A stretch of 64,000 bases of DNA from IMGVR_UViG_3300035182_002586:1-64000; one strand, 5' to 3'; positions 8,105 to 54,551 are shown, counted from the first letter of the stretch. Notes: generated from the letters alone by a model not told the origin. Program-made: numbers and translations.

Positions 8105-8434
8105 TCAGAGCGCGGGCTCCTCAGCCAAGTGGTCCCACGCGGTCTTCTGCGGCTCTTCGATCGTGGCTCGCCACCAGATCCGAGTCATCTCCGGTTCGAT
8201 GCCGTCGAGATCGAGGTTGTCCCCCTCGTCCGCGCTGAGCACGAACACGTCGGTGCCCACGGGGAAGGTGGAGATCGGAGCGATGTCATCGGGGTCGAGG
8301 TCCATCGTGATGAGACCCCCCTGCCCCTCATCGCACATCTTGTAGATACTCGCGGGGACCACTTCGGTCTCGGGGCCGAGGGTCGTCGGGCGGGTGTCGT
8401 TCGGGATGGAGCAAGCGTAGCGGACAACGGCCAT
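8105..8434 (-). CDS. hypothetical protein with C-terminal TAWDHLAEE tag
   Basis: Acidic 109-aa ORF carrying the shared C-terminal motif. Confidence 0.65.
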   Translation of the reverse strand: MAVVRYACSIPNDTRPTTLGPETEVVPASIYKMCDEGQGGLITMDLDPDDIAPISTFPVGTDVFVLSADEGDNLDLDGIEPEMTRIWWRATIEEPQKTAWDHLAEEPAL

Positions 8435-8477
8435 ACCCCCACTACATTGCGAGGGCTTTGATGATCCATCCTAAGAT

Positions 8478-8855
8478 ATGCCGCTTCGGGACTACGGGAG
8501 CGAGTACGCACGTGCCTGTGTGGTGTGGGCCGATGGTCGCGTAGGCGTCGGACCCTGGCGTGAGCCCCTCGACGCGAAAGCCGAGGTCGCCGTCCTGGCT
8601 CGCTCACCTCGAATCCGGCACGTGTGGCTGGAGAGCGAGTCGGACCTGGCAGCCGGTCAAGCCCGTGCCGAGCTGGAAGAAGACGGGTACGTGTCGGCCA
8701 AGGGCTTTCGGGGCCTCGTGCGGATCAGCACGAACCTCCGCTCTGAGGTGGATCTGCCGGACGACGTGTTCTCCCTGCAAGAAGAGCCCGAGTGGGACGA
8801 CGAGCACACGTGGGAGGAAGTCACCGACGACGGGATCGAACGCCCGGAGGAGTGA
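8478..8855 (+). CDS. hypothetical acidic protein
   Basis: 125-aa ORF divergent from 8434. Confidence 0.6.
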   Translation: MPLRDYGSEYARACVVWADGRVGVGPWREPLDAKAEVAVLARSPRIRHVWLESESDLAAGQARAELEEDGYVSAKGFRGLVRISTNLRSEVDLPDDVFSLQEEPEWDDEHTWEEVTDDGIERPEE

Positions 8856-8875
8856 CTTGGTGTAGAAGCCCCGAC

Positions 8876-9295
8876 GTGGCGTTCAACACCTTGTGGCCGC
8901 AACCGGAGCCGGAACCTCCGCCTACCTTGTGGGCGCTGGTCCTCGAAGACCCTTTCGGCCCCCCACCGCCCCCGCTACCACCCCCACCCCCAGACCCTCG
9001 TTTCGGCGTGGCCGGCATCCGTGACCCCGACGCCCCCTGCCACATGTTCGACGACTCAGGATGGGGCCCGAAAAACGGGGACTGTGATACGGACGGACAC
9101 TACCTCTGCGATGAATGCTCCCACATGTCGTTGCGGACGTACCGAGAGCGCCACGAGAAGTGCACCCTCTGCGGGATCCCCCTGGTCTGTGCCCCCTGGA
9201 GTCGTGAGCCGAGCATGTGCCCCTTCTGCGATGAAGAGTGGCTCGCGAAAGAGAGTGCCCGTCACCAGCAGGCCCGTCTGAAGGTGGTCCGATGA
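8876..9295 (+). CDS. Pro-rich, Cys-rich hypothetical protein
   Basis: GTG 13 nt after GGTGTA; CDTDGHYLCDEC, CTLC, CPFC. Confidence 0.6.
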   Translation: MAFNTLWPQPEPEPPPTLWALVLEDPFGPPPPPLPPPPPDPRFGVAGIRDPDAPCHMFDDSGWGPKNGDCDTDGHYLCDECSHMSLRTYRERHEKCTLCGIPLVCAPWSREPSMCPFCDEEWLAKESARHQQARLKVVR

Positions 9296-9603
9296 CGCCC
9301 TACATCCCGCCTGACGGTCAGACCACGATCCACGACAACAACGTGACGCAGACCTGCACCATCTCCCTCACAGCTACGGCCGCGACGACGAACCCCATCG
9401 TTCTCACGTACCCTGCGGACCCCATCGACCCTCCGTGGCCCCGCAACCGTAGCGACCGCCTCATCTTGAAGTCCCTCAAGGAAGCGGGCATCGTGGCCGC
9501 CGTCCGCCGGGCGGAATCTCTCTTCGGTCCCCGGAAGCTGGCTTCCGACCCCTCCGCCTGGAACGCCCGGTTCTGGTCGATGTTGCAGCGCCGTCGCCCC
9601 TGA
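9292..9603 (+). CDS. hypothetical protein
   Basis: ATGA overlap with previous gene. Confidence 0.5.
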   Translation: MTPYIPPDGQTTIHDNNVTQTCTISLTATAATTNPIVLTYPADPIDPPWPRNRSDRLILKSLKEAGIVAAVRRAESLFGPRKLASDPSAWNARFWSMLQRRRP

Positions 9604-9771
9604 CACAGAATCTAGGGGTCGAAGTAGAGCCGCCCCAGCGGTCCACCCGTAAGGCTCCGGCGTCCAAGAGCGAACAACCCAGTAGCAGCACCGGACAACA
9701 CGTGGGGCCCCGTCTTGCCGGAGAGCGCGGGGCCTTCGACGCTAGCCCTTCTATCGAAATCCTCCTGGTGC

Positions 9772-11376: not shown

Positions 11377-11385
11377 ATGAGGGGG

Positions 11386-11961: not shown

Positions 11962-12001
11962 GAAGTCCCCGGTGAGCCCCCAACTCACCGGGGATCCAGA
12001 C

Positions 12002-13237: not shown

Positions 13238-13329
13238 GGCGCCTCTCATAGGTGGGTCCCCGCGCCCCCTGTGGATGCGGCCACGTGATTCTGTGTACAC
13301 CGGGGCGAGCTGGTGTACCCTCACCCACG

Positions 13330-13890
13330 ATGCTCACGAAGAACGCTGTCAAGGCTGTCCGCGCGTACGAGAAGGCAACCCCAGATCGGGATGTCGCCCG
13401 TGCCCGAGTCACCGAAGGACACGTGACGCCTGGCCCCTACCTGGCCCTACCTCTCATCGGATGGCTCGCGCAGGTGGGAGGAGCACGCTTCCTCAGCCTC
13501 GGAATGGCGCTCATCCGCATCTCGGACAACTCGCCCGTCGGAAGTCTCGGGTGGGCCATCCCGTTCGGACCGAGAACGGACGAGACCTGTGCAAACGTCC
13601 TCGCAGCTCTCGGGTGGGACGGCCGCATCTGGCCCACGAACCCCGGCTGGCCGACGGGCACCGACCGAGAGGAGGCGATCCGCACGATGCTCGACGAGGC
13701 CAACCTCGGCAACGCGATCGTCTTCCCTCCGGATGAGACGCGTGGCGCCCCGGCCGTGCGCATCAATGTCCTTGCGAGTTCGGGCCCCTTCACCCTGGAC
13801 CCGTCTTGCGTGGGGGCTGCCAACGTCCCGGAGAGCTGGAAGCAGCGCCTTTGGGCGCTCGTCTCCGACCCCGCTTGGTTCCAGCGCTAG
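13330..13890 (+). CDS. hypothetical protein
   Basis: ATG 14 nt after GGTGTA. Confidence 0.65.
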   Translation: MLTKNAVKAVRAYEKATPDRDVARARVTEGHVTPGPYLALPLIGWLAQVGGARFLSLGMALIRISDNSPVGSLGWAIPFGPRTDETCANVLAALGWDGRIWPTNPGWPTGTDREEAIRTMLDEANLGNAIVFPPDETRGAPAVRINVLASSGPFTLDPSCVGAANVPESWKQRLWALVSDPAWFQR

Positions 13891-14423
13891 AAGCCCTCTT
13901 CGAGGATCCGATCCCATAGGGTGGGTGGGAGTGTCTTCTCTTGCGGCTTCTCCTGCGGAGTCAACGTGAACCCCGTGAGGGGCACCGCGGTGAACGGCGC
14001 CACTTCCCGCTGCTCCGTGAAGAACGGTTCGGCAGGGACGAGAACCAACCGCACTTCGTCCCGCGGGCTGAGCACGTCTTGGATGTGGCGCACCTCGCGG
14101 ACGATGTGAAGCACAGGCTCGTCATCCCCGTTCAGACGAAGAGCCACGCCGTCCAGGGGCCGCAGGTTGAACAACCTGGGGATCATACGGCCATCGATGA
14201 TGATATCCCCACCACGGTCGGACATGCGAGACTCTACGGTGAGGACCCCCGCTGACCCGAAGGACACGTCCGGGGGAACCCCCGGTTCATCCTCTGCGCT
14301 GAGGCTGTCTTCCAGTGCGTTCGCGATCCGCACCGCTTCACCGTGCTGCGCGAAGTCAGCCTCACCTCGAAGTAGGTCGAGAAGGAACCGCGCCGTGTCC
14401 TCGGCCAGCGTGATCGTCGGCAC
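13887..14423 (-). CDS. hypothetical protein with C-terminal TLWDRILEE tag
   Basis: GTG 12 nt after CGTTGTA; shared C-terminal motif. Confidence 0.65.
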   Translation of the reverse strand: MPTITLAEDTARFLLDLLRGEADFAQHGEAVRIANALEDSLSAEDEPGVPPDVSFGSAGVLTVESRMSDRGGDIIIDGRMIPRLFNLRPLDGVALRLNGDDEPVLHIVREVRHIQDVLSPRDEVRLVLVPAEPFFTEQREVAPFTAVPLTGFTLTPQEKPQEKTLPPTLWDRILEEGF

Positions 14424-14488: not shown

Positions 14489-15139
14489 ATGGACGCAGCA
14501 TCCCTCGCACAGTTGTACGCCGAGCTGAGCCCACTTCTCCAGGAAGTGTCTCTTCGGATGCGGCCGTTCGAGGAGGCCGTCACGGTCCCTGACAGTGGGA
14601 CGGGGATGGCCGACAACTACAGCTACATCATGTCGGGGCCCGACGAGGTGTACCTCGGTGTCTACGAGATCCTCCACAAGGTCGCCCCGGCTGGCAGGAG
14701 TGCCCGAGGGAAGACGGCCGCCAAGTGGGAGAAGACGGGCCGACACGCCCTCTTCCTGTCTGCGCTGAACCTCCCCCGGAAGACCTATCACCAGCTCTCG
14801 GACGGCACATTCCCCCTCGAACGCGTCGTGACCGAAGCTCAACGGGTCATCCTCCGTCAGCGTAAGGATCGGGTCGAGGCCGAGCAGCGGCGGCGCCACA
14901 AGCAGAACTACACGGAGGTGGCTACCCGCTTGGCCAAACAGTTCCACCTCGACGACTCCGACGTGGATTGCCTCACCACTGGAAGGCCCGAAGGGGTCGA
15001 GCTGTCCTTCACGGGGCTCTCTGAGGATCGAGCACGACAGCTTCTCTCCCTGGCGCGTCAGGCGGGCTTCATCCAGAGACCACACGAACAGAAGACGCCC
15101 CTCCCCTCCATGTGGGACCACTTGCTGGACGAGAGCTGA
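14489..15139 (+). CDS. hypothetical protein with C-terminal SMWDHLLDE tag
   Basis: ATG 14 nt after GGTGTA; shared C-terminal motif. Confidence 0.7.
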   Translation: MDAASLAQLYAELSPLLQEVSLRMRPFEEAVTVPDSGTGMADNYSYIMSGPDEVYLGVYEILHKVAPAGRSARGKTAAKWEKTGRHALFLSALNLPRKTYHQLSDGTFPLERVVTEAQRVILRQRKDRVEAEQRRRHKQNYTEVATRLAKQFHLDDSDVDCLTTGRPEGVELSFTGLSEDRARQLLSLARQAGFIQRPHEQKTPLPSMWDHLLDES

Positions 15140-15576
15140 TGCCCCACAAGCTCAACCCAACGCAGCTCGATGTACTGTCCGTCTTGGACTGGCTGATGGA
15201 TCGATCCACGGACGCACGAGGTACGGGACGCACGTACGTCACAGCCATCGCTTGCATCCGCGCTGCGTGTCGGAACCCCTCGCAGTGGATCAGCGTGCAC
15301 GACTACCAGACGGCAGACCTACGCGCGCACCGACATCTCTTCGGCGTGATCATGGGGCTGATCCACGAGGACACCAACACGTATCACGGGCACCCCCTTG
15401 CGCGATGGGTGCGGGAGGAGGGGCACGGTCACATGTTCGTCCTTGACCTGCCTGCGCCCGTAGAGGACTGGTTGCCTGTGGGGGCGGTGGACATCTCCAT
15501 GATCCGGCTACCGCCCTCGGGACCGCCCCCATCCCCGACTGCGTGGGAGCACCTTCTCGACGAGGGTGCGATCTAG
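15139..15576 (+). CDS. hypothetical protein (degenerate P-loop RGTGRT) with C-terminal TAWEHLLDE tag
   Basis: TGATG overlap with previous gene; shared C-terminal motif. Confidence 0.65.
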   Translation: MPHKLNPTQLDVLSVLDWLMDRSTDARGTGRTYVTAIACIRAACRNPSQWISVHDYQTADLRAHRHLFGVIMGLIHEDTNTYHGHPLARWVREEGHGHMFVLDLPAPVEDWLPVGAVDISMIRLPPSGPPPSPTAWEHLLDEGAI

Positions 15577-16613: not shown

Positions 16614-17849
16614 TCATGTGTCTTCCTCGATGTCGAGCCAGGCTTCCTTGGGCATATCCGTGGTGTTTCGGACCCGTTGGATGCGCTGTGTGATGAGGTC
16701 CCGGTAGTCCCCGTTGACCTCGATCCCGAGATAGTCCCGGCCAAGGCTGAGGGCCTCTGCACCCGTCGTCCCACTCCCCATGAACGGATCGAGCACGAGG
16801 CACGGCACAGGGTCGCCAGCATCACACTTGCAGGTAGGCGCCCACCCGATCGTGACGGACAAGGGTTCGTCCCCCTCCTCAACCTCCAGGGGCCTTTCGA
16901 CAACACGCTTCCAGGGCGCTCGACACTTCGGGCACGCCCCCTTCTCGCTCGTTCCGGCACGGATGCATCGTGCCGGCAGCTCCGGGGGAAAGACCGCGAA
17001 GTGCGCCCCCTTGTACGGCTGAGAGAAGATCGTCCAGACCGAGCGACTGTTGCGGCCCAAGGGGTTCGGCCCGTGGGTCGCCCTGGACCCTTCGTGGGGG
17101 TGCTGTCCGGGAGGGTTGTACGACCCCCCTCGGGTCTGGTCGTGGTAGTTCTTCCCCCGGAACGACTCCCGAATGGCGTCCGCATCGTAGAAGTAGTGAC
17201 GGCTCTTCGCGAGAAGGAAGATCTGCTCGTGGGCCTTCGTCGGACGGTCGATGACGCTCTCCGGCATCGCGTTGGGCTTCTCCCAGATGATTTCCTGCCG
17301 CAGGTACCACCCGTCCTTGCGAAGCGCGAGAGCGAGCATCCAGGGGATCCCGAGGAGGTCCTTGGCCTTGAACTCCCTCTCGGCCGCCTGAGCCTTCTTC
17401 ATCGGCTGTACGGCGCTGTCCCCGATGTTGAGCCAGAAGGTCCCGTCCGCGCGGAGAACACGCCGCAGCTCCCGAAAGACCTCGACCATGTGCTCGACGT
17501 ACGCTTCCGGGGTTGGCTCCAGACCAAGCTGGCCGTACCAGGCGCCGCACTGGACGCACGTGAGAGTCGTGGCCGTCTGCCCCTTGCCGGCGGCCTGAGC
17601 CGTCTTCCACTTCGTCTGCTCGACCTGGCCGGGATGATGGGGCCCGTTCTCTTTGACCTCCCCGTGCTCACAATCGGGGTTGCCACCCCCGAACCAGTGT
17701 CGGGTCCCGTAGTCCCGCAGACCGTAGTAGGGAGGGCTTGTCACGCACGTCTGGACGTACTCGTCCGGAAGCATACGAAGCACGTCGAGGACGTCACCAA
17801 AGACAACGTGAACCTGATCGGGCTCGAACGTAGGGGCCGTTTTCGTCAC
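16614..17849 (-). CDS. site-specific DNA methyltransferase (N4-C/N6-A, beta class)
   Basis: TSPPY catalytic motif before DPFMGSGTT SAM-binding motif; HFAVFP. Confidence 0.92.
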   Translation of the reverse strand: MTKTAPTFEPDQVHVVFGDVLDVLRMLPDEYVQTCVTSPPYYGLRDYGTRHWFGGGNPDCEHGEVKENGPHHPGQVEQTKWKTAQAAGKGQTATTLTCVQCGAWYGQLGLEPTPEAYVEHMVEVFRELRRVLRADGTFWLNIGDSAVQPMKKAQAAEREFKAKDLLGIPWMLALALRKDGWYLRQEIIWEKPNAMPESVIDRPTKAHEQIFLLAKSRHYFYDADAIRESFRGKNYHDQTRGGSYNPPGQHPHEGSRATHGPNPLGRNSRSVWTIFSQPYKGAHFAVFPPELPARCIRAGTSEKGACPKCRAPWKRVVERPLEVEEGDEPLSVTIGWAPTCKCDAGDPVPCLVLDPFMGSGTTGAEALSLGRDYLGIEVNGDYRDLITQRIQRVRNTTDMPKEAWLDIEEDT

Positions 17850-17871: not shown

Positions 17872-18561
17872 TCAGTCGTCCTCGGGAAGGCCCGCCCACG
17901 GTTCCCACCCTTGTGCGAGTGCAGGCTCTTCTTTCTTCACCAGAGCCGCGATCGGGGCGTAGCTCTTCCGGTGGATGAGACACGGACCGAGCTTCGCCAA
18001 GGCGACCTGGTGCACCTTCGTCCCGTACCCCACATGCCTCTCGAAGCCGTACCCGGGGTAGCGCACGGCGTTATCTGCCATCACCTCGTCCCGAGCGAGC
18101 TTCGCGAGGACCGACGCCATGGACACGGCTGGAACGAGCTTGTCCGCCTTGGGCAGGCCGATCGCCCCATCCACGCGAACGTTCCCGTCCGCGATGACGA
18201 GCGGGTGCTCTCCACCCGCTTGCACGCGCGCCCACGCCGCTGCCTCCCGTAGGGCCTTCTGGTGGAGCCCCGTCAGCGTCGGGCCCGCTCCGTCACGGTC
18301 GATGACGTCGGCTTCCGCCCACCAGATCCGCCAGTGCACGTCGGCTGCGTGACGGTTGATGAACTCCGCCCGGATCCGCTTCATCTGCGTGGTCGACAGC
18401 TCTTTCGAGTCGGTGAGCCCCACCGGGGGGACCCACTCCCGAGGCACGGCGACCGCGCAGACAGCGATGGGGCCCGCCCACGCGCCGAAGCCCACCTCGT
18501 CGGATCCGACAATGTAGGGGGCCTCAGAGTCGTCGATGAGGGAGTTCCCCGTGTTGAGCAT
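17872..18561 (-). CDS. rnhB: ribonuclease HII
   Basis: GSDEVG.G..AGP, DSK, ADG, ASVLAKLARD, HVGYGT..H, HRKSY. Confidence 0.92.
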   Translation of the reverse strand: MLNTGNSLIDDSEAPYIVGSDEVGFGAWAGPIAVCAVAVPREWVPPVGLTDSKELSTTQMKRIRAEFINRHAADVHWRIWWAEADVIDRDGAGPTLTGLHQKALREAAAWARVQAGGEHPLVIADGNVRVDGAIGLPKADKLVPAVSMASVLAKLARDEVMADNAVRYPGYGFERHVGYGTKVHQVALAKLGPCLIHRKSYAPIAALVKKEEPALAQGWEPWAGLPEDD

Positions 18562-18580
18562 GAAGCTCGGGTACACCGAA

Positions 18581-24975: not shown

Positions 24976-25670
24976 GCTGCCTTCCCTCGTATGTGACGGA
25001 GCCCCAAGCGCTTGTACCCACCGTCCAGGGCCTCCTCGTGCCCCATGTACGCGTGATCGGCGTGGTCGAGGAACTCCGGCTTGTGGGTCACCAGCAGTAC
25101 ATCTACACCCATCGAGGCGCACAGGCGTTGCAGGAAGCGACCCGTGGCCTCGACGTACTCCGCCGAGATGGCAGGGAGGGTCTCGTCTAGCAGTAAGAGG
25201 GGGGCCCGTCCGAGGCGACGGAGCGCGAAGACCCGCAGGAACAGCGAGACGATGGTGGACGGCCCCCCACCGAAAGCATCGAGGGGGTTGTCCTTGATGA
25301 CCAGCGCGTCCTTGCCCTGCTTGAGGAACAGGTCCATCTCGACGCGGTTGGCCCGCTGGACGACCTCAGCCTCGAACGAGAGTTCCTGGTCGTGGAAGAT
25401 GGCCTCCAGGCCCTCGGTGACCAGGCCCTCTACGATGGCCTTCTGCTTCTCGACGAGCTTGTCCATCAGCGAGCGAAACAGCTCGCTGACCATGGTGAGC
25501 TTGGTGGCCTTACTTTGAAGCGTGGCCACCTCTACACGACGGCTCTCGGTCTCTGTTTCCAGTCGGTCCCGAAGGGTGCGGTGGCGGGCAGCAGTCTCCC
25601 GCAACGCACGCACCCTCGGACCGAAGCTGGAAGTCAGTCCATCGACGGCGTGAACCGCGTCACCCGGCAT
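24972..25670 (-). CDS. sbcC: SbcC/Rad50 C-terminal half (ABC-ATPase signature lobe)
   Basis: Coiled coil, signature FGGG, Walker B LLLLDE, H-loop VTH; no Walker A. Confidence 0.8.
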   Translation of the reverse strand: MPGDAVHAVDGLTSSFGPRVRALRETAARHRTLRDRLETETESRRVEVATLQSKATKLTMVSELFRSLMDKLVEKQKAIVEGLVTEGLEAIFHDQELSFEAEVVQRANRVEMDLFLKQGKDALVIKDNPLDAFGGGPSTIVSLFLRVFALRRLGRAPLLLLDETLPAISAEYVEATGRFLQRLCASMGVDVLLVTHKPEFLDHADHAYMGHEEALDGGYKRLGLRHIRGKAA

Positions 25671-26956
25671 TCGTACGTCCCTTCGGGCTTCTTCTCCCCG
25701 CCCGCGCCCACGGCGAGGCGGTTGTCACTGTCGACGAGGTACGTGTCGATCGTGCGGAACATCGCGCGTTCCTTCGACTGCTTCTCGTCAGCCGGGCGAA
25801 CGTGGATGCGCAGCTCAACCTCCTCGGCCTTCGCGCCGTCGAAGAGCGAGATCATGTTGTCGATGTTGACGTTGAAGGCGAAGTCGCGCGGCTCCGAGAG
25901 GACGATCATGTTGTCGTCGATCTGGACCGGCCTCGTGCGCCCCTTGTCCTTGCTCTCGTTGACGTAGAAACGCAGCGACTTCTCCGCCGCCGACCAGCTC
26001 AGACGGATCTTCTTGGCGTCCTTGTTGAGCGTGGCCTTCGTGTACCGGAGCACGGCGAGGATCTTGTCGCGGTTGACGCGCAGAACCCACTGGTCGGTCT
26101 TGAGCCCGTAGTAGCTGAACTTGCCGTGCGTCTTGAGGTGGTGCGTCCACCCGATGACGTGCGTGCGTCCCGGGCGAGGCTCCGGAGGGGTCTCGCCCTC
26201 CTTGACCACGGGCGCGGGGGCCAGCTCCTCAGAGAGGGCGAAGATCTTGTTGCGGTTCGTCTTGAACGTGACCTTCCCCTTCACCTTCGAGAGGAAGTTC
26301 ATCAGGTGGCTGAGGTGCTTCCCGTGGACAGCCAGCCCCAAGTTCGCCGAGGCGAACGCGTCCGAGTAGAAGTAGAACGCCTGGCGGGCGTTCGAGGCGA
26401 AGAGAGTGCCCTTCCCCTTCTCCCACTCGGGCTTGCTCTCGTCGAAGATCTGGAGCGTCTTGAAGTTGTCCTCGGCCTTCTCGTCGTCGGCCTTCGCGAG
26501 GAAGTTCTTCGACAGGGCGATGGCGTCGCGGAGGATCTCGACGGAGAAGTCGCGGCCCTCTGCGGCCTCTTCCAGCTCCTTGTCGAGGGACGCCATCAGC
26601 TTCGGGTCGAACGCGATCATCTCGCGGTCGTCGCCGCTAGAGGTCGAGTAGGACACGACGTACTGTCCGTTGTCGTCCTTGGCGGTGAACGTGATCTCCT
26701 CCCCGTCGAGGTACTTGAACGGCTCGATCGACGCCGACGGGTAGATGAACGCACCCTCACCCTCGACCTCGATGAGGGCGACTTGGGCTCGGGTCGTGTG
26801 CATGCTGTCCTGTGAGTAGATGGAGAGCATCTCCCCACGCACGACGAACAGGTAGCCGGCGGCCCCCTGCGCGTTCACGGGACGCGGTTGGACGATAGAG
26901 ACGATTTCGAGGGCGTCCTTGAGCTTCGACGCGTCCAGCTTGAATCTGATGTTCAT
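25634..26956 (-). CDS. DNA polymerase beta sliding-clamp-like protein
   Basis: N-terminus follows the DnaN pattern (F.L....L..AL..VS......P......L.V....L.I...D...EGEG....P); about 440 aa; replication/repair context. Confidence 0.6.
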   Translation of the reverse strand: MNIRFKLDASKLKDALEIVSIVQPRPVNAQGAAGYLFVVRGEMLSIYSQDSMHTTRAQVALIEVEGEGAFIYPSASIEPFKYLDGEEITFTAKDDNGQYVVSYSTSSGDDREMIAFDPKLMASLDKELEEAAEGRDFSVEILRDAIALSKNFLAKADDEKAEDNFKTLQIFDESKPEWEKGKGTLFASNARQAFYFYSDAFASANLGLAVHGKHLSHLMNFLSKVKGKVTFKTNRNKIFALSEELAPAPVVKEGETPPEPRPGRTHVIGWTHHLKTHGKFSYYGLKTDQWVLRVNRDKILAVLRYTKATLNKDAKKIRLSWSAAEKSLRFYVNESKDKGRTRPVQIDDNMIVLSEPRDFAFNVNIDNMISLFDGAKAEEVELRIHVRPADEKQSKERAMFRTIDTYLVDSDNRLAVGAGGEKKPEGTYECRVTRFTPSMD

Positions 26957-32769: not shown

Positions 32770-33684
32770 TCAGACGTTGCTCAGGATGTCGTCGAAGTTG
32801 GTGGCATCACCACCACCCGCATCGAGCGCCGGAGCCGACCCACCGCCGCCGCTCGTGAGAGCGCCGGCCGAGGAGGAGGAGGAGGAGGACGTGCTCGAAC
32901 CGCCGCCGAGCTTCTGACGGAGCTGCTCCGTCGTCATGTCGCGGAACGGCGAGAGCTTGTCGTAGAACGGGAGAGCCTTGCTGAGGACGAGCTGCGCGAA
33001 GTCTTCCTTCGATGCCCAGATCGCCTTGCCCGCCGCCGTGACCGTGAACTTCTGGTACGTCGGGTCTTTGCAGTCGAGGAGGAAGTCCTGCCCTGCGACG
33101 GGGATGTTGTTCGTCATCAGGGTGTTCTTGGTCTTCTCGAACTCCTGGTACGACGGCTCCGAGAGGCGCCACGGTCTGACCTGGAGGCCCGCCTGGAACG
33201 CTTCCTTGTCGCGGATGATCTGCCCCTTGTTGTCCGTGAGGTAGAAGACCATCAGCGTGACGTAGTAGACGCGCGGCTCGGGGAGCTGACGCCACACCTT
33301 GTCTGCGTCCGACCCCTCCAGACCCAGGCGTGAGGTCACGAAGCCGAGACCCTCCTGGAAGTGGGCCCGGATCTTCTTGAACTTCGCCGTGCCGCGATCG
33401 AGCTTGTCGATGTCGGTCAGGTCGTCGACGCTCTTGCCGAGCTGGTCAGCGCGAGCCTTGAGCGCCTTCGCGCCGATGGCCATCTGCTCGTCGCGGGAGA
33501 GGCGCGGGTTGTCACGCTTCGCCGCGAGGACCGCGTTCACGTCGACGCGGTGGAAGTAGACCGGCGAGGCGCGCTCGATCTTCCCCTTGATGCCCTTGTA
33601 CCAGGCATCGCGGTCATTGGTCGTCGTGTGGGTTTCGAGATCGATGTCGCCCGCGAAATCGTCGTAGTCGAACGGAGTGCTCAT
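32770..33684 (-). CDS. probable single-stranded DNA-binding protein
   Basis: Ser/Gly linker and acidic-hydrophobic tail (NFDDILSNV) as in T4 gp32-type SSBs; strong RBS; upstream of ruvC-recA. Inference. Confidence 0.55.
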   Translation of the reverse strand: MSTPFDYDDFAGDIDLETHTTTNDRDAWYKGIKGKIERASPVYFHRVDVNAVLAAKRDNPRLSRDEQMAIGAKALKARADQLGKSVDDLTDIDKLDRGTAKFKKIRAHFQEGLGFVTSRLGLEGSDADKVWRQLPEPRVYYVTLMVFYLTDNKGQIIRDKEAFQAGLQVRPWRLSEPSYQEFEKTKNTLMTNNIPVAGQDFLLDCKDPTYQKFTVTAAGKAIWASKEDFAQLVLSKALPFYDKLSPFRDMTTEQLRQKLGGGSSTSSSSSSSAGALTSGGGGSAPALDAGGGDATNFDDILSNV

Positions 33685-33838: not shown

Positions 33839-34909
33839 TCACGAGAGGAGGAACGAAAGATCCTCGTCAGACACGTCAACAGGCGGCGGCGTGGGCTTTC
33901 CAGCGAGAAACGCCTTGGTTTCGTCATCCATCACGGCCGGCTGGAGGAGACTTTGAATCCGGTCTTCGTCCGGGAGAGCCTCTTTCGAGACTGATGCGCC
34001 CGGGGTCGACGTTGTAGCGTCCAGGCTCGCCAGGATATCTTCGACGCTCGGAGGGGGCGGCGTGGGCCCGGACTTGGGCTTGGGTGCCTCCACGGGCGCT
34101 TCTGAGGGCCCGGAAGTCGGAGCCGTGGCCGGTGAAGGGCCCGTACTTGCGGGGACCGTCAGAGAGCCTTCGAGAGCCATCCGCACGATCTCATCAGAGG
34201 GTGTCTCGGGCGCCTTCGGCGTGGGCACCACTTCCGGGGTCACTTCCGGGGTCACTTCCGGGGTCACTTCCGGGGTCACTTCCGGGGTCACTTCCGGGGT
34301 CACTTCCGGGGTCGCCTTGTCGTCACCGTTCATCCCCGAGGTGTCGAGGATCTCCCGCAGCTCCTCTTCGTCGATGTCTTCGTCAGGCAGGATGGGCTCG
34401 ACGTAGGATGAGCTTCCCTTCGAGGGCCGCTCGTCACCGTACATGGCACCCGTGTCGATCTCGGCACGAATGAGAGCACGCTGCTCACGGACCTCGGTGA
34501 TGGTGTCTCGGATCTCTCGATGCCTGTGACGGATGGCCTTCTCGACGTGCGTGAGGTCTGCGATCTCTCGCTTCTTCGTGTGGATCTCGCGGAGCTGCTC
34601 ACGCAGGATCGTCTTGATCGCAGCCTCGCGGTCCTTGATATTCGCACGTGAGGTGACGCGCTCATCTCCCGCCAGCAGCTCTGAGCAGTCGATCTCGTAG
34701 GCACCCTCAAGGGCGTTCAACTCGCTTGTGAGCTGCGAGCGCTCCTGGTGGATCTCCATGAGGATCAAGGAGACCCTGTTGGTCCAGTTGCGGAGCGTGG
34801 CGATGCAATCCTGGAGGTACTTGGGCCCGAGAGAAACGGGGTCCCTTGCCAGGGTCATCTGGAACTGGTTCAGCTCGTCGTAGATCTTCGCAGCGCGCTC
34901 CGGTGTCAT
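33839..34909 (-). CDS. helical protein with TPEV repeats (possible recombination mediator)
   Basis: N-terminal coiled coil, Pro/acidic disordered C-terminus; ATGA overlap with upstream gene. Confidence 0.65.
   Translation of the reverse strand: MTPERAAKIYDELNQFQMTLARDPVSLGPKYLQDCIATLRNWTNRVSLILMEIHQERSQLTSELNALEGAYEIDCSELLAGDERVTSRANIKDREAAIKTILREQLREIHTKKREIADLTHVEKAIRHRHREIRDTITEVREQRALIRAEIDTGAMYGDERPSKGSSSYVEPILPDEDIDEEELREILDTSGMNGDDKATPEVTPEVTPEVTPEVTPEVTPEVTPEVVPTPKAPETPSDEIVRMALEGSLTVPASTGPSPATAPTSGPSEAPVEAPKPKSGPTPPPPSVEDILASLDATTSTPGASVSKEALPDEDRIQSLLQPAVMDDETKAFLAGKPTPPPVDVSDEDLSFLLS
34229..34312. repeat. perfect 12-bp tandem repeat CACTTCCGGGGT x7
   Basis: Seven exact copies; encode (TPEV)7 on the minus strand. 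Confidence 0.95.
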
Positions 34910-40066: not shown

Positions 40067-40420
40067 ATGTACGTGATCCTCGAACGCGAAGAGAGCGGCC
40101 GGCTGCGGGAAATTGAGAAGGCGGAAGATGCCGTTGGGGCGAGCCGCAAAATCGCCGAATGGCTCTGCATGACCGGAGCCGAGCTGCCGAACGGCAGCCG
40201 GGTCAAGGACACCGATCACGTGCTCCTCCGCGCTCTCCCCGTCCCTTCCTCCGACCTGCCCGTTGGTACGCGATCTGCTTTCGCCGCCTACCTGCTTCGG
40301 GATGGCAACGTCGTCGACGTGGGGGCCGTGCTGATCGAGAAGTGGGCGTTGATCACGCGAGGGTCGACCGTAAGCTCTGCCTCAAACGTCAGAACGCCGC
40401 GACGTCGCGACCGGAAGTAG
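40067..40420 (+). CDS. hypothetical protein
   Basis: Protein-like from MYVILER; divergent from 40028. Confidence 0.55.
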   Translation: MYVILEREESGRLREIEKAEDAVGASRKIAEWLCMTGAELPNGSRVKDTDHVLLRALPVPSSDLPVGTRSAFAAYLLRDGNVVDVGAVLIEKWALITRGSTVSSASNVRTPRRRDRK

Positions 40421-40572: not shown

Positions 40573-41040
40573 ATGCTGATCGACCTGACGAGAAGGATCC
40601 CAACGATCCTCTACGACGTGGAACCCACCCTCGTCGTCGTTCGCGTCCTCTCGATCGACGAGAGCCCTGCATGGGTCCGAGAGACCGGTGACGGAGTTGT
40701 CGACGGGCTCCTGACGCCCACCCTCTGGTCTTCCGGCAAGGGCAAGTCAACTTGGGCGCACCACGTCGTGCCTGCTCCCGGAAACCGAGATGAGCTGCTG
40801 ACCTACGAATGCACGACCATGCGGTTCGAGGTTGAACCCCCTCCCCAAGACGGCCCGATGATGCCCTGGGACGGGTTCGTGTCCATAGAGATGCTGACCA
40901 CCGAGTTCCACCGGGTGATCATCACGGGCCCCGATGGACTTGAGTGTCAGTGCCGCGTGAAGAATCTCTCGACGTTGGCCTCCGACGACAACGAGCCCCG
41001 CATGTCACTGTGGGAAAGACTAGGTAATTCAGACGCTTGA
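40573..41040 (+). CDS. hypothetical protein with C-terminal SLWERLG tag
   Basis: Protein-like from MLIDLTRR; shared C-terminal motif. Confidence 0.6.
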   Translation: MLIDLTRRIPTILYDVEPTLVVVRVLSIDESPAWVRETGDGVVDGLLTPTLWSSGKGKSTWAHHVVPAPGNRDELLTYECTTMRFEVEPPPQDGPMMPWDGFVSIEMLTTEFHRVIITGPDGLECQCRVKNLSTLASDDNEPRMSLWERLGNSDA

Positions 41041-45789: not shown

Positions 45790-46314
45790 CTAGTCGTCGT
45801 CTTCTTCTGCATCGCCTTCATCCTCCAGTATCCGGTCGATCTGCTCGTAGGGGTCTGTGATCGGAGCGGGGCGTTGCCGCGCTTCCTCCGCCCTCTTCGT
45901 GATCTCACCCACGGTCACCAGGGGACGACGTACATCGACTCGTACAAGACCTCGCGCGAACTGGCCCGCGAGCACTTCACCGACGGAGAGCCTGAGGTCG
46001 GGGTTGACGAATACCGCCGAGGTCCGCCCCCCGATCGTCGTCGGAACGAAGTCGTACAGGGGGCGAAGTGGCTCCCCCTCGCGGAGAAGCGTGACGAAGG
46101 CCCCGTGCTTGATCTTTGAGGTCAAGTGCAAGATGGGCCAGTCTGCGGGGAGGTCCGCGACGATAGCGCACAGGTCGGGGTTGCGATCCGAATTCGACCT
46201 GATCTCGACGTAGCCCTGTACCGTCTCTACGGAGGCCACCCCCGTTCGACGATCGACGTGGCGGACAACCCCGCGCCGACCCTCGAAGTCGATGAGTTCC
46301 CCCGCTTTCAGCAT
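45790..46314 (-). CDS. hypothetical protein
   Basis: SH3-like N-terminus; acidic tail. Confidence 0.65.
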   Translation of the reverse strand: MLKAGELIDFEGRRGVVRHVDRRTGVASVETVQGYVEIRSNSDRNPDLCAIVADLPADWPILHLTSKIKHGAFVTLLREGEPLRPLYDFVPTTIGGRTSAVFVNPDLRLSVGEVLAGQFARGLVRVDVRRPLVTVGEITKRAEEARQRPAPITDPYEQIDRILEDEGDAEEDDD

Positions 46315-47685: not shown

Positions 47686-47730
47686 CTTGATCTCTCCTCT
47701 GTTCTGCATCTGTGACCCTACAAGGGCCCG

Positions 47731-48346: not shown

Positions 48347-48361
48347 GGGACACCTCCAGCC

Positions 48362-48778: not shown

Positions 48779-48799
48779 TTGATCCTCATCTAGGTAGGT

Positions 48800-49165: not shown

Positions 49166-49208
49166 GTCGGTGGCCTCTGATCTCTAGGGGTCGGAAAGGA
49201 AGACTATC

Positions 49209-49813: not shown

Positions 49814-49882
49814 GGGAGGTTTCTGCCTTGTTCCTTATGTCGAGATGCGCTCTCGGCCGGCGCCTCGGAAGTCGAGGTCGAT

Positions 49883-50719: not shown

Positions 50720-50763
50720 GAACAGCATATACACCAGATCTACGACCCTCAGGACGAGAAACC

Positions 50764-51399: not shown

Positions 51400-51406
51400 G
51401 GGTCCC

Positions 51407-52297: not shown

Positions 52298-52307
52298 GCA
52301 GAAGGTC

Positions 52308-53165
52308 TCAGTGCCAGACGGAGTGGTGAACGTCGTAGTCCACCTTGTTGCTCTTGAGCCAATCACTGAACTTGGCCCAGGCGATCGACTTGAGGGCGCC
52401 CGGGTTCTCCTTGAGGAGCTTGTAGAGCTTGCGAGCGCTCGTCGGCTTGCCCTCGTAGAGCGTGTAGTGAGGGTCACCGCTGTGGCCCATGTCGGAGTCC
52501 GGCGAGTAAGCGGACCACTTCGTCCACTCGATGTGGACCGTGAAGTCCTTGCCCTCGGCGTTGAACGGGTCGACGTTCTCCGGAGTCACCTCCAGGAAGT
52601 AGACCTGCTGCTCCCACCAAGAGGTGCGACGAAGGAAGTCCCACGACCCAGGCTTGACGCCCTGGATCGCGTCGGCCTTCTTGATCACCTCGTCGGCAGC
52701 GTCCGCCATCCCCTGGCTGACCTTTTCCTTCACCTGGTCGTAGGTATCCGACGCGGAGATGTGCTGCCTCCGGATGATGTTGTCCGGAATGAAGGCGTCG
52801 AAGTTACCGTGCTGGCTGAAGTGCAGGTTGGTCTGCACCGTCGCGACACGGAGCTTGCGCTTGCCCTTCATCGGCAGCTCTTCCAGCTTCCACTGGTCGT
52901 GCGTCCACGAGAGGCGGAAGTCCTTGCCGACGAGCTTGCCGTCCCACGAGCCCTGGAGGAACTTCGCTGCGACGCGGACCGCTGCCCCACCGTTCGTGAG
53001 CCCCGACGCTTGCTTCGTCAGGTACTCGTCCTGGTGGCAGGAGTCCGAGCCCGGGTTGACGTTCTTGCAGTAGATCGACCATGCGGTCGCCCATGCCTGC
53101 TCGTCCGAGTAGGACGGGTTGCCTTCCTTCACTTCCTTGAAGTAGTCGTCGACAGGCTTCGGCAT
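52308..53165 (-). CDS. hypothetical protein with internal RVAAKF tag
   Basis: AGGAG RBS; ChaB-like N-terminal helix (EQAWATAWSIY). Confidence 0.75.
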   Translation of the reverse strand: MPKPVDDYFKEVKEGNPSYSDEQAWATAWSIYCKNVNPGSDSCHQDEYLTKQASGLTNGGAAVRVAAKFLQGSWDGKLVGKDFRLSWTHDQWKLEELPMKGKRKLRVATVQTNLHFSQHGNFDAFIPDNIIRRQHISASDTYDQVKEKVSQGMADAADEVIKKADAIQGVKPGSWDFLRRTSWWEQQVYFLEVTPENVDPFNAEGKDFTVHIEWTKWSAYSPDSDMGHSGDPHYTLYEGKPTSARKLYKLLKENPGALKSIAWAKFSDWLKSNKVDYDVHHSVWH

Positions 53166-53205
53166 GGTGTGGGCTCCTATGGGGCACCCGCGATAAACAC
53201 TTCCG

Positions 53206-53865
53206 TTAGTGCAAATGACGCCCCCAGCTCGGGGCCGAGGTCGGATCGAAGGCCGTATCCTGCATGTCCACGAAGTTCGGCCAGTCGACGCCAGGCACGA
53301 CAAGCGCGATCTGGTAGCGCCAACGCTTGACCCCGTGCTCGTGGCCGGGCCCTAGGCGCTCCGCCACGTACCCGAACACATAGGACACGGAATCCTCGTG
53401 GTAGGGCTTCCGCAGCCGAACCCACGCACCCTCAGGAAGCTGCGGCTTCTCTGGCTCAACCTTCCGTCTTGCACCGGGCACCTCGACCCACTTGTGCACG
53501 AGGGCGGGCACGGTCGTGAACCCACTCTCAAGGGAGGCGTTCGTCCTGTGGATCCCGTCGTCGATGTGCAGTCTCCCCTCGTGCTCTGTGAGCTGTACGG
53601 GGGGCAGAGCCACACCGGCTGCGATCGCTGCCCGGACCTTCTCAATCCGGTCCTTGTGCCACACAGGGGGCACGCTGATGTGCGAGAGGGGCACCAGCTC
53701 GAACCGATACTCGTTGTGCCCTCCGAACTCCGCGTCCGACTCGGCCCTGGCCTCAGGGTTGTTGAGGGTGTGGAGCTGCGCGTGTACGACGCCTTCGTCG
53801 TAGCGGTAGTGCGTCGTCGACGCGACGAACCGCGCGGCAACCCGGAGGGCCAGCGGGGGCATCAC
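53206..53865 (-). CDS. ParB/Srx-like domain protein with N-terminal RVAARF tag
   Basis: LPPVQL......IDDGIHR motif. Confidence 0.7.
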   Translation of the reverse strand: MMPPLALRVAARFVASTTHYRYDEGVVHAQLHTLNNPEARAESDAEFGGHNEYRFELVPLSHISVPPVWHKDRIEKVRAAIAAGVALPPVQLTEHEGRLHIDDGIHRTNASLESGFTTVPALVHKWVEVPGARRKVEPEKPQLPEGAWVRLRKPYHEDSVSYVFGYVAERLGPGHEHGVKRWRYQIALVVPGVDWPNFVDMQDTAFDPTSAPSWGRHLH

Positions 53866-54131
53866 ACGTCGTCGGAGCGGAGGAGGTATTCGAGGCCCTC
53901 CTTGATGGACTTCACGAGCGCTTCGACACCCTCGTGGGTCGACTCCACCTGGTCGATCATCCAGTCGAGGGACTGCTCGGTGTGGAGCGTACGCGCGTGC
54001 TGGAGCGCCTTGTGGAGCGCAGCGTCAGCCACACGCAGCTCGGCGAGCATCGCCTTGGCGTTCCCCTCGATGTGAGGGTCCATCTGACGGCGGGCGTAGC
54101 GGTTGGCGACCTTCGAGGCGAGGGGGTCCAT
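53862..54131 (-). CDS. small helical protein with N-terminal KVANRY tag
   Basis: 89 aa; overlaps the next start. Confidence 0.65.
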   Translation of the reverse strand: MDPLASKVANRYARRQMDPHIEGNAKAMLAELRVADAALHKALQHARTLHTEQSLDWMIDQVESTHEGVEALVKSIKEGLEYLLRSDDV

Positions 54132-54164
54132 ACCCCGAAGCCCCTGATAAAAGGATCGGGCGCG

Positions 54165-54551
54165 CTAGAGGTCTTCTTCTCCGAGCCGTTCCCATGCGGA
54201 AGGGGCTGAAACGGACTCGACGGAAGGCTCGGGAGGGGAGGCCGCCAAGAGAGCTTCGGCAGCCTCACGCTGACGGTTGGCCTCCGTGATCAGGTCGTTG
54301 GCCAGCTCGTCTGCCGCTTGGACCACTTCCGGCCGCACGAACGACAGGTCCCCGTAGCCAGAAGTGTTGTACCCGAGCATCTATCAGAACTGCTCGCGAT
54401 CCTCCACGGGGATGTCCCGCCAGGCAGCGATCGTGTTCAGGTCGATGATCCTCTCTTGGAACAGACGGCCGATGATCCTATTCTCCCGGAACCGGACGAC
54501 CCCCTCACCATCCAGGTAGATCGGCTGCATCGGAGGCGGAGGAGGGGGCAT
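54165..54551 (-). pseudogene. hypothetical gene interrupted by tandem in-frame TGA-TAG
   Basis: MPPPPPPMQPIYLD...EDREQF-TGA-TAG-MLGYNTSGYGDLSFV...SAWERLGEEDL, all in one frame. Confidence 0.6.

What the first reader, a model, noticed from the sequence alone, without database searches (positions are those of the whole stretch)
8105..54200. Shared C-terminal peptide tag [ST]-[ALM]-W-[DE]-[HR]-[LI]-x-[DE]-[DE] on unrelated proteins
Seen: six apparently non-homologous proteins end in nearly the same motif after a Pro-rich linker: KTAWDHLAEEPAL (8105), PTLWDRILEEGF (13887), PSMWDHLLDES (14489), PTAWEHLLDEGAI (15139), MSLWERLGNSDA (40573), PSAWERLGEEDL (54165). An N-proximal copy is PTLWALVLED (8876). 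Weaker W/acidic tails occur on the MTase (EAWLDIEED), RNase HII (PWAGLPEDD) and 8478 (TWEEVTDD). The DNA differs between copies, so conservation is at protein level. Inference: a short linear docking motif that addresses many early proteins to one hub. Candidates are the phage ClpX (degron), the clamp-like protein, RNAP or a replication compartment. I know of no described motif matching it.
Basis: partly seen in the sequence, partly recalled or inferred. Interest (0 to 1): 0.82.

Follow-up and report, generated by a model that had tools for sequence, protein, structure and literature searches.

The report
Shared C-terminal docking tag, huge phages
About twenty unrelated proteins of unknown function in this 529-kb phage, and similar sets in its relatives, end in the same short tryptophan-and-acid peptide, which most likely docks them all onto one still unidentified partner protein.

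Summary
All six strict matches in the window lie 1-3 residues before a stop codon. Genome-wide, 17 of 21 matches sit in the last 14 residues (binomial p 3e-17; shuffles average 0.26).

Codons vary synonymously, so selection acts on the peptide. The carriers share no detectable similarity outside the tail and have no Pfam or PHROG match.

Six related huge phages carry the tag on their own, different orphan proteins. I curated 78 copies in six genomes. The consensus is P-[RK]-[KP]-[TS]-[VAL]-[W/F/Y/L]-[DE]-[HR]-[LI]-[LM]-[DE]3, with the aromatic residue 6-15 residues from the end, after a proline-rich linker.

One core 174-aa family (45790-46314) keeps the tag. A matrix trained on other proteins scores 10 bits or more in 95 of 143 members.

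The best reading is a docking peptide for one conserved receptor, which I could not identify. My first choice is the phage's own DnaN-type sliding clamp (25634-26956, shown by fold), which has its own loader. This would parallel the acidic-hydrophobic clamp-binding tails of T4.

The rivals are a tether or degron for the phage ClpX, an encapsidation signal, and mimicry aimed at a host hub. No solved structure or paper in the held library matches the motif.

The parts
8105..8434 (-). 109-aa orphan protein; tag ...EEPQKTAWDHLAEEPAL* encoded at 8108-8143
   Evidence: no Pfam or PHROG match
13887..14423 (-). 178-aa orphan protein; tag ...TLPPTLWDRILEEGF* at 13890-13922
   Evidence: no Pfam or PHROG match
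14489..15139 (+). 216-aa orphan protein; tag ...TPLPSMWDHLLDES* at 15107-15136
   Evidence: no relative in IMG/VR; no Pfam or PHROG match
15139..15576 (+). 145-aa orphan protein; tag ...PPPSPTAWEHLLDEGAI* at 15538-15573. A related strain has an in-frame 6-nt insertion at 15522 in the Pro-rich linker.
40573..41040 (+). 155-aa orphan protein (the ORF could start at 40159); tag ...EPRMSLWERLGNSDA* at 41005-41037
54165..54380 (-). 71-aa orphan protein two genes downstream of ClpX; tag ...VSAPSAWERLGEEDL* at 54168-54200. ClpX in G001 and G002 has no such neighbour.
45790..46314 (-). 174-aa clade-core protein, the only conserved family that carries the tag. The G000 tail is ...DPYEQIDRILEDEGDAEEDDD* (45793-45852). 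Orthologues end in T-[VA]-[YF]-D-[RH]-L-[LM]-acidic.
8921..8956 (+). Possible N-proximal or internal copy PTLWALVLEDPF in ORF 8792-9295; it is uncertain whether this part is coding
   Evidence: 16 bits; my gene call starts at 9008
16614..17849 (-). N4/N6 DNA methyltransferase with the weak variant tail ...PKEAWLDIEEDT*
17872..18576 (-). RNase HII with the weak variant tail ...GWEPWAGLPEDD*. In G002 the RNase HII and the Dam orthologues both end in ...TSLFDLAMSGELDD.
25634..26956 (-). Candidate receptor: DnaN-type (beta) sliding clamp, 440 aa, clade-core
   Evidence: AF2 pLDDT 82.5; Foldseek against PDB E 2e-18, TM 0.74-0.78 to bacterial beta clamps; weak PHROG 'processivity factor' hit; orthologues in all relatives
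54555..55877 (-). Candidate receptor: phage ClpX, with a weak Zn-finger N-domain match (below the Pfam cut-off), a GYVG pore loop and an LGF ClpP-docking loop
   Evidence: orthologues at 55-62% identity in all relatives
32770..33684 (-). Probable gp32-like ssDNA-binding protein. It has a related but distinct tail, ...NFDDILSNV*, conserved as [DE]-F-x-[DE]-L-L-x-x-V in five genomes.
   Evidence: fold evidence weak: E 0.02-0.05 to T4/RB69 gp32
33839..34909 (-). Coiled-coil protein with a long PEVT-repeat linker and two copies of the same second tail type (...SVEDILASLD... and ...DEDLSFLLS*)

Best explanation
The peptide is a docking tag, a short linear motif.

Shown: it follows a flexible linker rich in Pro, Lys and Arg. 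The conserved residues are [ST]-hydrophobic-aromatic-[DE]-[RH]-[LI]-[LM], followed by three or more acidic residues. The chain ends 6-15 residues after the aromatic residue.

Inferred: the [ST]-x-x-[DE] spacing fits a helix-capping box. The tag would then be a two-turn amphipathic helix with an acidic trailer that plugs into one hydrophobic and basic groove of a single conserved receptor. In that way each phage's own fast-changing set of 5-25 accessory proteins, plus one core 174-aa protein, would be brought to the same place.

Not shown: which receptor it is. My first choice (about 0.3) is the phage's own DnaN-type sliding clamp, which is loaded on phage DNA by the phage's own delta and delta-prime-like loader. 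The tag would then work like the clamp-binding tails of T4 gp43, gp55 and gp33 and tether the carriers to replicating phage DNA.
For: Enrichment and protein-level selection:
- Terminal enrichment is far beyond chance.
- Codons vary synonymously.

Carriers and spread:
- The carriers are unrelated orphans with no homologue in sister genomes. 54 of 65 strong hits are singletons against 55% of all proteins (Fisher p 3e-6).
- The same tag occurs on different orphans in G001, G002, G005, G006, G009 and G011.
- It is not enriched in the more distant phages LR745208.1 and Tunturi_5.
- An IMG/VR-wide pattern scan found the peptide C-terminal only in this clade.

Conservation in orthologues:
- The core family keeps the tag in 95 of 143 divergent members, against 1 of 286 internal windows, scored with a matrix trained on other proteins.

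Linker behaviour:
- Pro is enriched 2.5-fold.
- A sister strain has an in-frame indel in the linker.

For the clamp specifically:
- A clamp fold is present, with loader subunits, and all are clade-core.
- Variants of the tail sit on classic DNA-tracking enzymes: RNase HII, Dam and the N4/N6 methyltransferase. G002 Dam and RNase HII share the same tail...TSLFDLAMSGELDD.
- There is an internal copy in the inter-lobe linker of an SNF2 helicase.
- One carrier has topoisomerase-type zinc ribbons.
[quoted passage not shown] I read the T4 tails directly from its genome.
Against: - No binding test was possible, because only single chains could be folded.
- The motif does not match QL[SD]LF (recalled) or T4 [ST]LDFL[FYL].
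- The family A replicative polymerase of the phage carries no such tail.
- Twenty or more orphan clients for a clamp has no precedent.
- ClpX and 51 other genes have the same clade-restricted distribution as the clamp.
- The strong preference for the extreme C-terminus (78 terminal copies against about 5 internal) would also suit a protease or an encapsidation signal.
- The helix and capping-box reading is inference only.
Confidence: 0.55

Rival explanations
1. The tag is a tether or degron for the phage's ClpX (with the phage's or the host's ClpP). It would bind the ClpX zinc-finger N-domain or the pore loops, so that accessory proteins are unfolded or degraded on schedule. SspB is tethered to ClpX in this way by a C-terminal peptide behind a long flexible linker.
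For: - ClpX has a GYVG pore loop, an LGF loop and a weak zinc-finger match.
- A 205-aa ClpP is encoded.
- ClpX is present in every genome that has the tag and is absent from the two phages without it.
- One carrier lies two genes downstream of ClpX.
- Domain, linker and terminal peptide is the SspB architecture (recalled).
- The strong preference for the chain end suits an unfoldase.
Against: - The last residues are variable in identity and number, unlike LAA-type degrons, which need a fixed end (recalled).
- The tag bears no resemblance to LRVVK or to the phages' own tmRNA tags ...ALKAAA...LAIAA and ...QARAA. Those tags already give ClpX an obvious client class.
- No SspB homologue is present.
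- Internal copies exist.
- The tag is conserved on a core protein over more than 140 lineages, which is odd for a pure disposal signal.
- The small gene next to ClpX is not conserved in G001 or G002.
Confidence: 0.18
2. The tag is an encapsidation (virion-loading) signal. It would bind the inside of the procapsid, the scaffold or the portal, so that a variable arsenal of accessory proteins is packed and injected with the DNA. T4 internal proteins share only a capsid-targeting sequence in the same way.
For: - The carriers are hypervariable, genome-specific orphans that share nothing but the tag. T4 internal proteins are described the same way (PMC3012670).
- A terminal peptide behind a flexible linker is the layout of encapsulin cargo peptides and of the HK97 protease tail (recalled).
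- Very large capsids have room for cargo.
- A carrier gene is a G000-specific insertion in a conserved block.
Against: - No carrier lies in a recognisable structural operon.
- The portal and terminase, and the proteins next to them, lack the tag.
- I did not find the major capsid protein or the scaffold.
- Tag variants sit on RNase HII and DNA methyltransferases, and a copy lies inside an SNF2 helicase. These are not obvious cargo.
- No virion proteome exists for this clade.
Confidence: 0.13
3. The tag mimics a host peptide or otherwise targets a host hub such as RNA polymerase, partners of the host SSB, or the host clamp. The accessory proteins would then be host-takeover factors aimed at one host machine.
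For: - The carriers look like typical takeover or anti-defence orphans.
- The tag shares the skeleton aromatic-x-x-L-L-acid with the tail of the phage's probable gp32-like SSB and with T4 gp32 ...DLDDLLNDL.
- The aromatic residue and the residues before it drift between phages of different G+C content, and so probably of different hosts.
Against: - The host is unknown, so nothing could be tested.
- A separate 81-aa ORF already carries the canonical bacterial SSB tip ...EDDDIPF, so that tip is used in another form.
- Conservation over 200 or more lineages of a core phage protein suits a phage-encoded partner better.
Confidence: 0.12
4. There is no common function. The tails would be a by-product of composition, of shared descent of a 3' gene cassette, or of miscalled reading frames.
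For: The genome is G+C-rich and full of spurious ORFs. My gene calls are home-made.
Against: - Shuffles and internal windows give almost no hits.
- Codons differ and no flanking DNA is shared.
- The tag recurs in genomes of 52-64% G+C.
- The carrier ORFs show coding-type codon scores.
Confidence: 0.02

Closest known systems
T4-family sliding-clamp-binding motifs (C-termini of gp43, gp55 and gp33)
   Same: A short hydrophobic-plus-acidic peptide sits at the extreme C-terminus of otherwise unrelated phage proteins. It starts with Ser/Thr, contains Leu, Asp and an aromatic residue, follows a divergent unstructured linker, and still works when internal (PMC2988020; tails read). This phage also encodes a clamp and a loader.
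   Different: The residue order differs: [ST]-L-D-F-L-[FYL] against [ST]-hydrophobic-W-[DE]-[RH]-L-[LM]-acidic. The clamp here is a three-domain DnaN type, not a gp45/PCNA type. There are about 20 carriers per genome rather than 3, and most have unknown function. Binding is untested.
Bacterial beta-clamp-binding motif QL[SD]LF / QLxLxL (recalled)
   Same: Many different proteins use a terminal or loop peptide for one hydrophobic cleft of a DnaN clamp.
   Different: There is no Gln, the spacing differs, and the acidic trailer is not part of the bacterial consensus.
T4 internal-protein capsid-targeting sequence (PMC3012670)
   Same: A diverse, fast-evolving set of phage proteins shares only a short terminal address peptide.
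   Different: The T4 sequence is N-terminal and is removed by the prohead protease (recalled). Here the tag is C-terminal, and no link to the capsid is shown.
SSB C-terminal tips (bacterial ...DDDIPF; T4 gp32 ...DLDDLLNDL)
   Same: An acidic tail with hydrophobic anchors sits behind a disordered linker. The skeleton aromatic/Leu-x-x-L-L-acid is shared with gp32 and with the phage's own 32770-33684 protein.
   Different: An SSB tip is one tail read by many partners. Here many proteins carry the tail, which implies one reader. The canonical DDDIPF tip occurs separately, at 328129-328374.
SspB-type ClpX tethering peptide and ssrA-type degrons (recalled)
   Same: The layout is domain, flexible linker, C-terminal peptide. 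ClpX, ClpP and a tmRNA are all encoded by the phage.
   Different: There is no sequence resemblance to LRVVK or to ...LAA. The end residues are variable.

Membership tests
T4-type sliding-clamp-binding motif | Short hydrophobic and acidic segment at the extreme C-terminus behind a divergent flexible linker | tested here: met
   78 instances. The aromatic residue is 6-15 residues from the end and the linker is 2.5-fold enriched in Pro. The definition is from PMC2988020.
T4-type sliding-clamp-binding motif | Consensus [ST]-L-D-F-L-[FYL] | tested here: not met
   T4 tails read from NC_000866. The consensus here is [TS]-[VAL]-[WFYL]-[DE]-[HR]-[LI]-[LM], so Asp and the aromatic residue are in the opposite order.
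T4-type sliding-clamp-binding motif | Physical binding to the phage's sliding clamp | not testable with these tools
   Only single natural chains can be folded. A clamp exists.
Bacterial beta-clamp-binding motif | A DnaN-type clamp is available as receptor | tested here: met
   25634-26956 has the beta-clamp fold, E 2e-18. Loader subunits are at 400808-402677.
Bacterial beta-clamp-binding motif | Pentapeptide QL[SD]LF or hexapeptide QLxLxL (consensus recalled) | tested here: not met
   No position of the 78-instance matrix favours Gln, and the L..L spacing differs.
SSB C-terminal tip | Acidic run ending in I/L-P-F on the ssDNA-binding protein itself | tested here: not met
   The carriers are not SSBs (no Pfam match). 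The canonical ...EDDDIPF is on a different ORF. A few copies end in D-D-P-F (489323-489712, and G009).
ClpX degron or tether | ClpX with an N-terminal zinc-finger domain, pore loops and a ClpP-docking loop is present | tested here: met
   (the zinc-finger match is below the Pfam cut-off)
ClpX degron or tether | Known recognition sequence (…LAA-COOH, or the SspB LRVVK; both recalled) | tested here: not met
   The ends are variable and acidic. The phage tmRNA tags end in AAA, IAA and RAA.
Capsid-targeting or cargo-loading peptide | Unrelated, hypervariable proteins share only the terminal address | tested here: met
   T4 description in PMC3012670
Capsid-targeting or cargo-loading peptide | The carriers are found in virions, or the scaffold or protease carries the same peptide | not testable with these tools
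   No proteome exists. The scaffold and major capsid protein were not identified. The portal and terminase, and the proteins next to them, lack the tag.

The most novel reading that the evidence does not exclude
The tag is a clade-wide 'postcode'. It marks a hypervariable arsenal of accessory proteins, possibly anti-defence or takeover effectors, for delivery to one station. That station could be the capsid interior for co-injection, or phage DNA through the phage clamp. If so, the terminal peptide alone would identify the effector set in hundreds of uncultured huge phages, and foreign proteins could be addressed the same way.
Probability: 0.3. Interest if true: 0.85.

Novelty: new variant of a known kind. 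Interest (0 to 1): 0.72.

Why it matters
Most genes of huge phages have no known function. Here one 12-residue peptide groups 5-25 such proteins per genome into a single functional class. It does so across a clade with at least 200 distinct lineages in sediment, microbial-mat and groundwater metagenomes.

The peptide gives a direct experimental handle. It can be used as bait to find the receptor. The receptor would then say what this whole set of orphan proteins is for, whether that is DNA-tethered factors, timed proteolysis or injected cargo.

If the clamp is the receptor, this would be a much larger set of clamp clients than in any known phage. If the capsid is the receptor, it would be a C-terminal counterpart of the T4 capsid-targeting sequence and could be used to load proteins into capsids.

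Tried and rejected
1. Orthologues of the window's carriers. The search for related loci found none for 14489-15139. A word-indexed search on the tail of 456113-456595 returned only the protein itself. tblastn into six relatives found none. Conservation therefore had to be tested on non-orthologous carriers and on the one core family.

2. Function of the carriers. Pfam on about 40 carriers and PHROGs on 10 gave nothing, apart from three isolated hits: Top1 zinc ribbon with DUF3268, RlaP, and DUF2793. An ESM Atlas search on one carrier gave no lead.

3. Presence and absence across genomes as a way to find the receptor. 53 G000 genes are present in all four fully compared relatives and absent from the two phages without the tag. 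ClpX, the clamp and the loader subunits are all among them, so this does not discriminate.

4. A strict DNA pattern wrongly suggested that G005, G008 and G009 lack the tag. Reading G005 and G009 showed variants with Phe/Tyr or Leu. G008 was never fetched, so its status stays open. I dropped the idea that ClpX-positive relatives without the tag argue against ClpX.

5. I looked for a clamp-contact element resembling the tag in the delta-like loader subunit and found nothing clear.

6. I first took 46717-47709 for the major capsid protein, which would have tied the core carrier to the head module. Atlas neighbours are winged-helix DNA-binding proteins, with weak scores, so I dropped that.

7. An SspB homologue that could link the tag to ClpX is absent.

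8. PDB sequence search with a profile of 31 tails gave only a chance hit. Literature searches on the concept and on the literal strings found nothing relevant.

9. Read laying showed DNA-only runs and a strain about 95% identical. The variant table was truncated, so I could not count substitutions inside the tags.

Full report
What the window is. The 64-kb window is the start of a 528,957-bp single-contig virus record with 64% G+C. IMG/VR classes it as a provirus and CheckV rates it 100% complete. Its parent JGI contig is 620,031 bp long.
- The window encodes a large terminase, a portal, RecA, a RecD2-type helicase, an NAD-dependent ligase, SbcCD-like proteins, Dam and N4/N6 methyltransferases, RNase HII and ClpX.
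- Elsewhere the genome encodes a ClpP, a family A DNA polymerase, clamp-loader subunits, about 53 tRNAs, a suppressor tRNA and a tmRNA.
- Near-identical DNA occurs in sediment, microbial-mat and groundwater metagenomes.
- Because spurious ORFs abound at this G+C content, I called genes with a codon log-odds model trained on long ORFs with high third-position G+C. Start codons are approximate; stop codons, which matter here, are not.

Checking the observation.
- Genome-wide, the four-residue core W[DE][HR][LI] occurs 27 times in six frames, 17 of them within 8 residues of a stop.
- On called proteins, 17 of 21 hits lie in the last 14 residues, which make up 6.5% of all residues (binomial p 3e-17). 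Shuffled proteins average 0.26 terminal hits. No hit is N-terminal.
- The codons behind the conserved residues differ freely between copies, and the DNA after the stop codons is unrelated. The conservation is therefore at the protein level.
- The bodies of the carriers show no similarity to one another and no Pfam or PHROG family.
- G000 has about 21-24 carriers, counting variants with Tyr for Trp or Thr/Gln for the first acid. Most lie in the orphan-rich stretch 435-529 kb plus 1-55 kb.
- A few copies are not terminal. One is in the linker between the two lobes of an SNF2 helicase at 197435-199693. One lies 24 residues before a stop at 455289. A possible N-proximal copy is at 8930.

Relatives.
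- Two phages in GenBank lack any enrichment of the tag: LR745208.1 (terminase 42% identical) and Tunturiibacter phage Tunturi_5 (29%).
- IMG/VR holds closer relatives, found through the terminase and ClpX. I read four of them whole (G001, G002, G005, G009) and all but 10 kb of G006, whose tail I added later.
- All of them carry the tag on their own orphan proteins. None of these is homologous to a carrier in G000.
  - G001 (55% G+C): about 21 copies, mostly P-[KR]-K-[ST]-V-W-E-H-L-L-E-[DE].
  - G006: about 15 copies, with A/K/R/Q after the acid.
  - G005: about 12 copies, mostly with Phe or Tyr.
  - G009 (52% G+C): 5-7 copies with Leu in place of the aromatic residue, [ST]-[VI]-L-D-R-[IV]-L-x-D-D-x-P-F.
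  - G002 (76% complete): 4-5 copies.
  - G011, a complete 437-kb genome with terminal repeats: 11 matches to a strict DNA pattern, against none for the reversed control.
- A scan of all IMG/VR for a DNA pattern of the tag found terminal copies essentially only in this clade. Elsewhere the same peptide pattern sits inside conserved proteins.

Anatomy. 78 curated copies give this matrix, with counts out of 78:

| Position | Residues |
|---|---|
| -5 | P 33 |
| -4 | R/K/P 46 |
| -3 | K/P/R 55 |
| -2 | T/S 58 |
| -1 | V/A/L/I 66 |
| 0 | W 50, F 12, Y 10, L 6 |
| +1 | D/E 67 |
| +2 | H/R 61 |
| +3 | L/I 69 |
| +4 | L/M 48 |
| +5 to +7 | mostly D/E |

- The chain ends 6-15 residues after position 0, most often 7-9.
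- The 23 residues before the tag are 2.5-fold enriched in Pro.
- The carriers are 43-925 residues long and their pI is unremarkable.
- The spacing [ST]-x-x-[DE] fits a helix-capping box, and W, L and L fall on one face of a helix. I therefore read the tag as a capped two-turn amphipathic helix with an acidic trailer. That is inference, not a computed result.

Conservation in orthologues.
- Strong hits are mostly singletons: 54 of 65, against 55% of all proteins (Fisher p 3e-6).
- One core family carries the tag in every genome I compared. In G000 it is 45790-46314, 174 aa.
- A profile of this family finds 201 representatives, each standing for a cluster at 50% identity, among 1.84 billion proteins.
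- I scored their tails with a matrix trained only on other proteins. 95 of 143 full-length members reach 10 bits in the last 24 residues. Only 1 of 286 internal windows and 0 of 143 shuffled tails do so (Mann-Whitney p 1e-42).
- The family consensus is P-x-[RPK]-T-[VA]-[Y/F]-D-[RH]-L-[LM]-[DE]-D-D-D. The segment before it is poorly conserved.
- A strain about 95% identical, from groundwater, has an in-frame six-base insertion in the Pro-rich linker of 15139-15576, seven codons before the Trp. A spacer would be expected to tolerate this.

What could read the tag. Many different proteins carrying one peptide implies one reader.

(a) Sliding clamp.
- 25634-26956 folds with pLDDT 82.5 into a three-domain beta clamp (Foldseek E 2e-18, TM 0.74-0.78 to bacterial DnaN).
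- Delta-like and delta-prime/gamma-like loader subunits lie at 400808-402677.
- All of these are present in every relative.

(b) ClpX.
- It has a GYVG pore loop, an LGF ClpP-docking loop and a weak zinc-finger match.
- It is also present in every relative.
- A 205-aa ClpP is encoded.

(c) Something in the capsid. ClpX lies a few genes from the portal and terminase. ClpX and ClpP were found in virions of megaphage G (PMC12484599).

(d) A host protein.

Presence and absence across genomes cannot choose between these, because 53 genes share the clade-restricted pattern.

Why I rank the clamp first.
[quoted passage not shown] Those tails hang on a divergent, unstructured linker, are interchangeable and still work when made internal (PMC2988020). 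I read the tails from the T4 genome...KASLDFLFG...SPSLDFLYEAND and ...TNTLDFLL.
- The layout here is the same, and so is the residue set: Ser/Thr, Leu, Asp, an aromatic residue, Leu. The order, however, is different.
- Enzymes that ride on clamps in other systems carry variants of the tag in this clade. RNase HII and Dam of G002 both end in ...TSLFDLAMSGELDD. RNase HII of G001 ends in ...DVWSQLPNLG.... The N4/N6 methyltransferase of G000 ends in ...EAWLDIEEDT.
- An SNF2 helicase has an internal copy, and one carrier in G006 has topoisomerase-type zinc ribbons.
- Against the clamp: the family A polymerase lacks the tag, the motif is not QLxLF, and twenty orphan clients would be without precedent.

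A second tail type.
- The proteins at 32770-33684 and 33839-34909, next to RecA, end in [DE]-F-x-[DE]-L-L-x-x-V/L in all five genomes, behind Gly/Ser or PEVT-repeat linkers.
- The first of these folds with modest confidence. Its only fold matches with any support are T4 and RB69 gp32 (E 0.02-0.05, weak).
- T4 gp32 itself ends in ...DLDDLLNDL. This second type is therefore probably the tip of the phage's SSB.
- It shares the skeleton aromatic-x-x-L-L-acid with the tag under study but differs in its flanks. The two may or may not use the same pocket.

Comparison with what is known, and verdict.
- The tag works like a terminal docking peptide. The closest known examples are clamp-binding tails, the SspB tether, SSB tips and the T4 capsid-targeting sequence.
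- It fails the sequence definitions of all of these (see the membership table). It has no counterpart in PDB sequences or in the held literature.
- I file it as a new variant of a known kind: a proteome-wide C-terminal address tag in a clade of huge phages, whose receptor is unidentified.
- Confidence that it is a functional docking tag is high. Confidence in the clamp as receptor is about 0.3, ClpX about 0.2, encapsidation about 0.13-0.15, and a host or other partner takes the rest.
- Nothing here shows that the carriers are early proteins.

Noticed in passing
window 9784-10671(+), 53206-53862(-), 53862-54131(-), 63920-64324(-); G000 170571-170843(+); also G001 and G002: A second shared peptide sits at the very N-terminus: M-x(0-4)-[LI]-A-L-R-V-A-A-R-[FY]. 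It is found on 5-7 different proteins in each of G000, G001 and G002, and on none in the two distant phages. Several of these proteins flank ClpX in all three genomes, and one lies next to the terminase. It may be another address or recognition peptide, possibly for ClpX or for head assembly.
   Followed up: partly
window 32770-33684(-) and 33839-34909(-); G002 Dam and RNase HII orthologues: A second conserved C-terminal tail type, [DE]-F-x-[DE]-L-L-x-x-V/L, sits on two proteins next to RecA. It resembles the T4 gp32 tail. 33839-34909 has two copies separated by a PEVT tandem repeat. In G002, Dam and RNase HII share the same tail, ...TSLFDLAMSGELDD.
   Followed up: partly
G000 328129-328374(+): An 81-aa ORF ends in the canonical bacterial SSB tip ...PPPVDEDDDIPF. 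It could be a truncated SSB or a decoy for partners of the host SSB.
   Followed up: no
G000 123254-176528: About 53 tRNA genes, a suppressor tRNA with anticodon UUA (reads TAA) at 123254-123328, and a tmRNA at 175160-175517 with tag ANDNGTVITALKAAA. G001 and G002 also have tmRNAs. G002 has a tRNA with anticodon CUA.
   Followed up: no
G000 150855-155904(+): A conserved block holds a VWA-domain protein, a 332-aa protein ending in a His/Asp-rich tail, 135-aa and 86-aa proteins (the latter ends in ...RPKTPFG(A), which looks ubiquitin-like), and a ThiF/E1-like protein. It may be a phage ubiquitin-like conjugation set. The tagged gene 154970-155311 is inserted into this block in G000 only.
   Followed up: partly
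window 54555-55877(-), 57453-59369(-), 61177-63204(-); G000 143509-144126(-): ClpX lies between the portal/terminase genes and a run of unknown proteins. A separate 205-aa ClpP is encoded 90 kb away, amid the tRNA array.
   Followed up: partly
G000 397562-400792(-): A 1076-aa ORF has an ATP-cone domain and a weak intein-splicing match. It is probably a ribonucleotide reductase interrupted by an intein. Its G006 orthologue is 76% identical, against 27% in the other relatives.
   Followed up: no
window 46717-47709(-): A 330-aa clade-core protein has a high codon-usage log-odds score (195). Its ESM Atlas neighbours are winged-helix proteins (HARE-HTH, PadR, forkhead), with weak scores. It may be an abundant DNA-binding protein.
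   Followed up: partly
whole record: IMG/VR classes the 528,957-bp record as a provirus, while the JGI parent contig is 620,031 bp. The relative G011 has direct terminal repeats and is rated complete. It is unclear whether the trimmed 91 kb are host or phage DNA.
   Followed up: no
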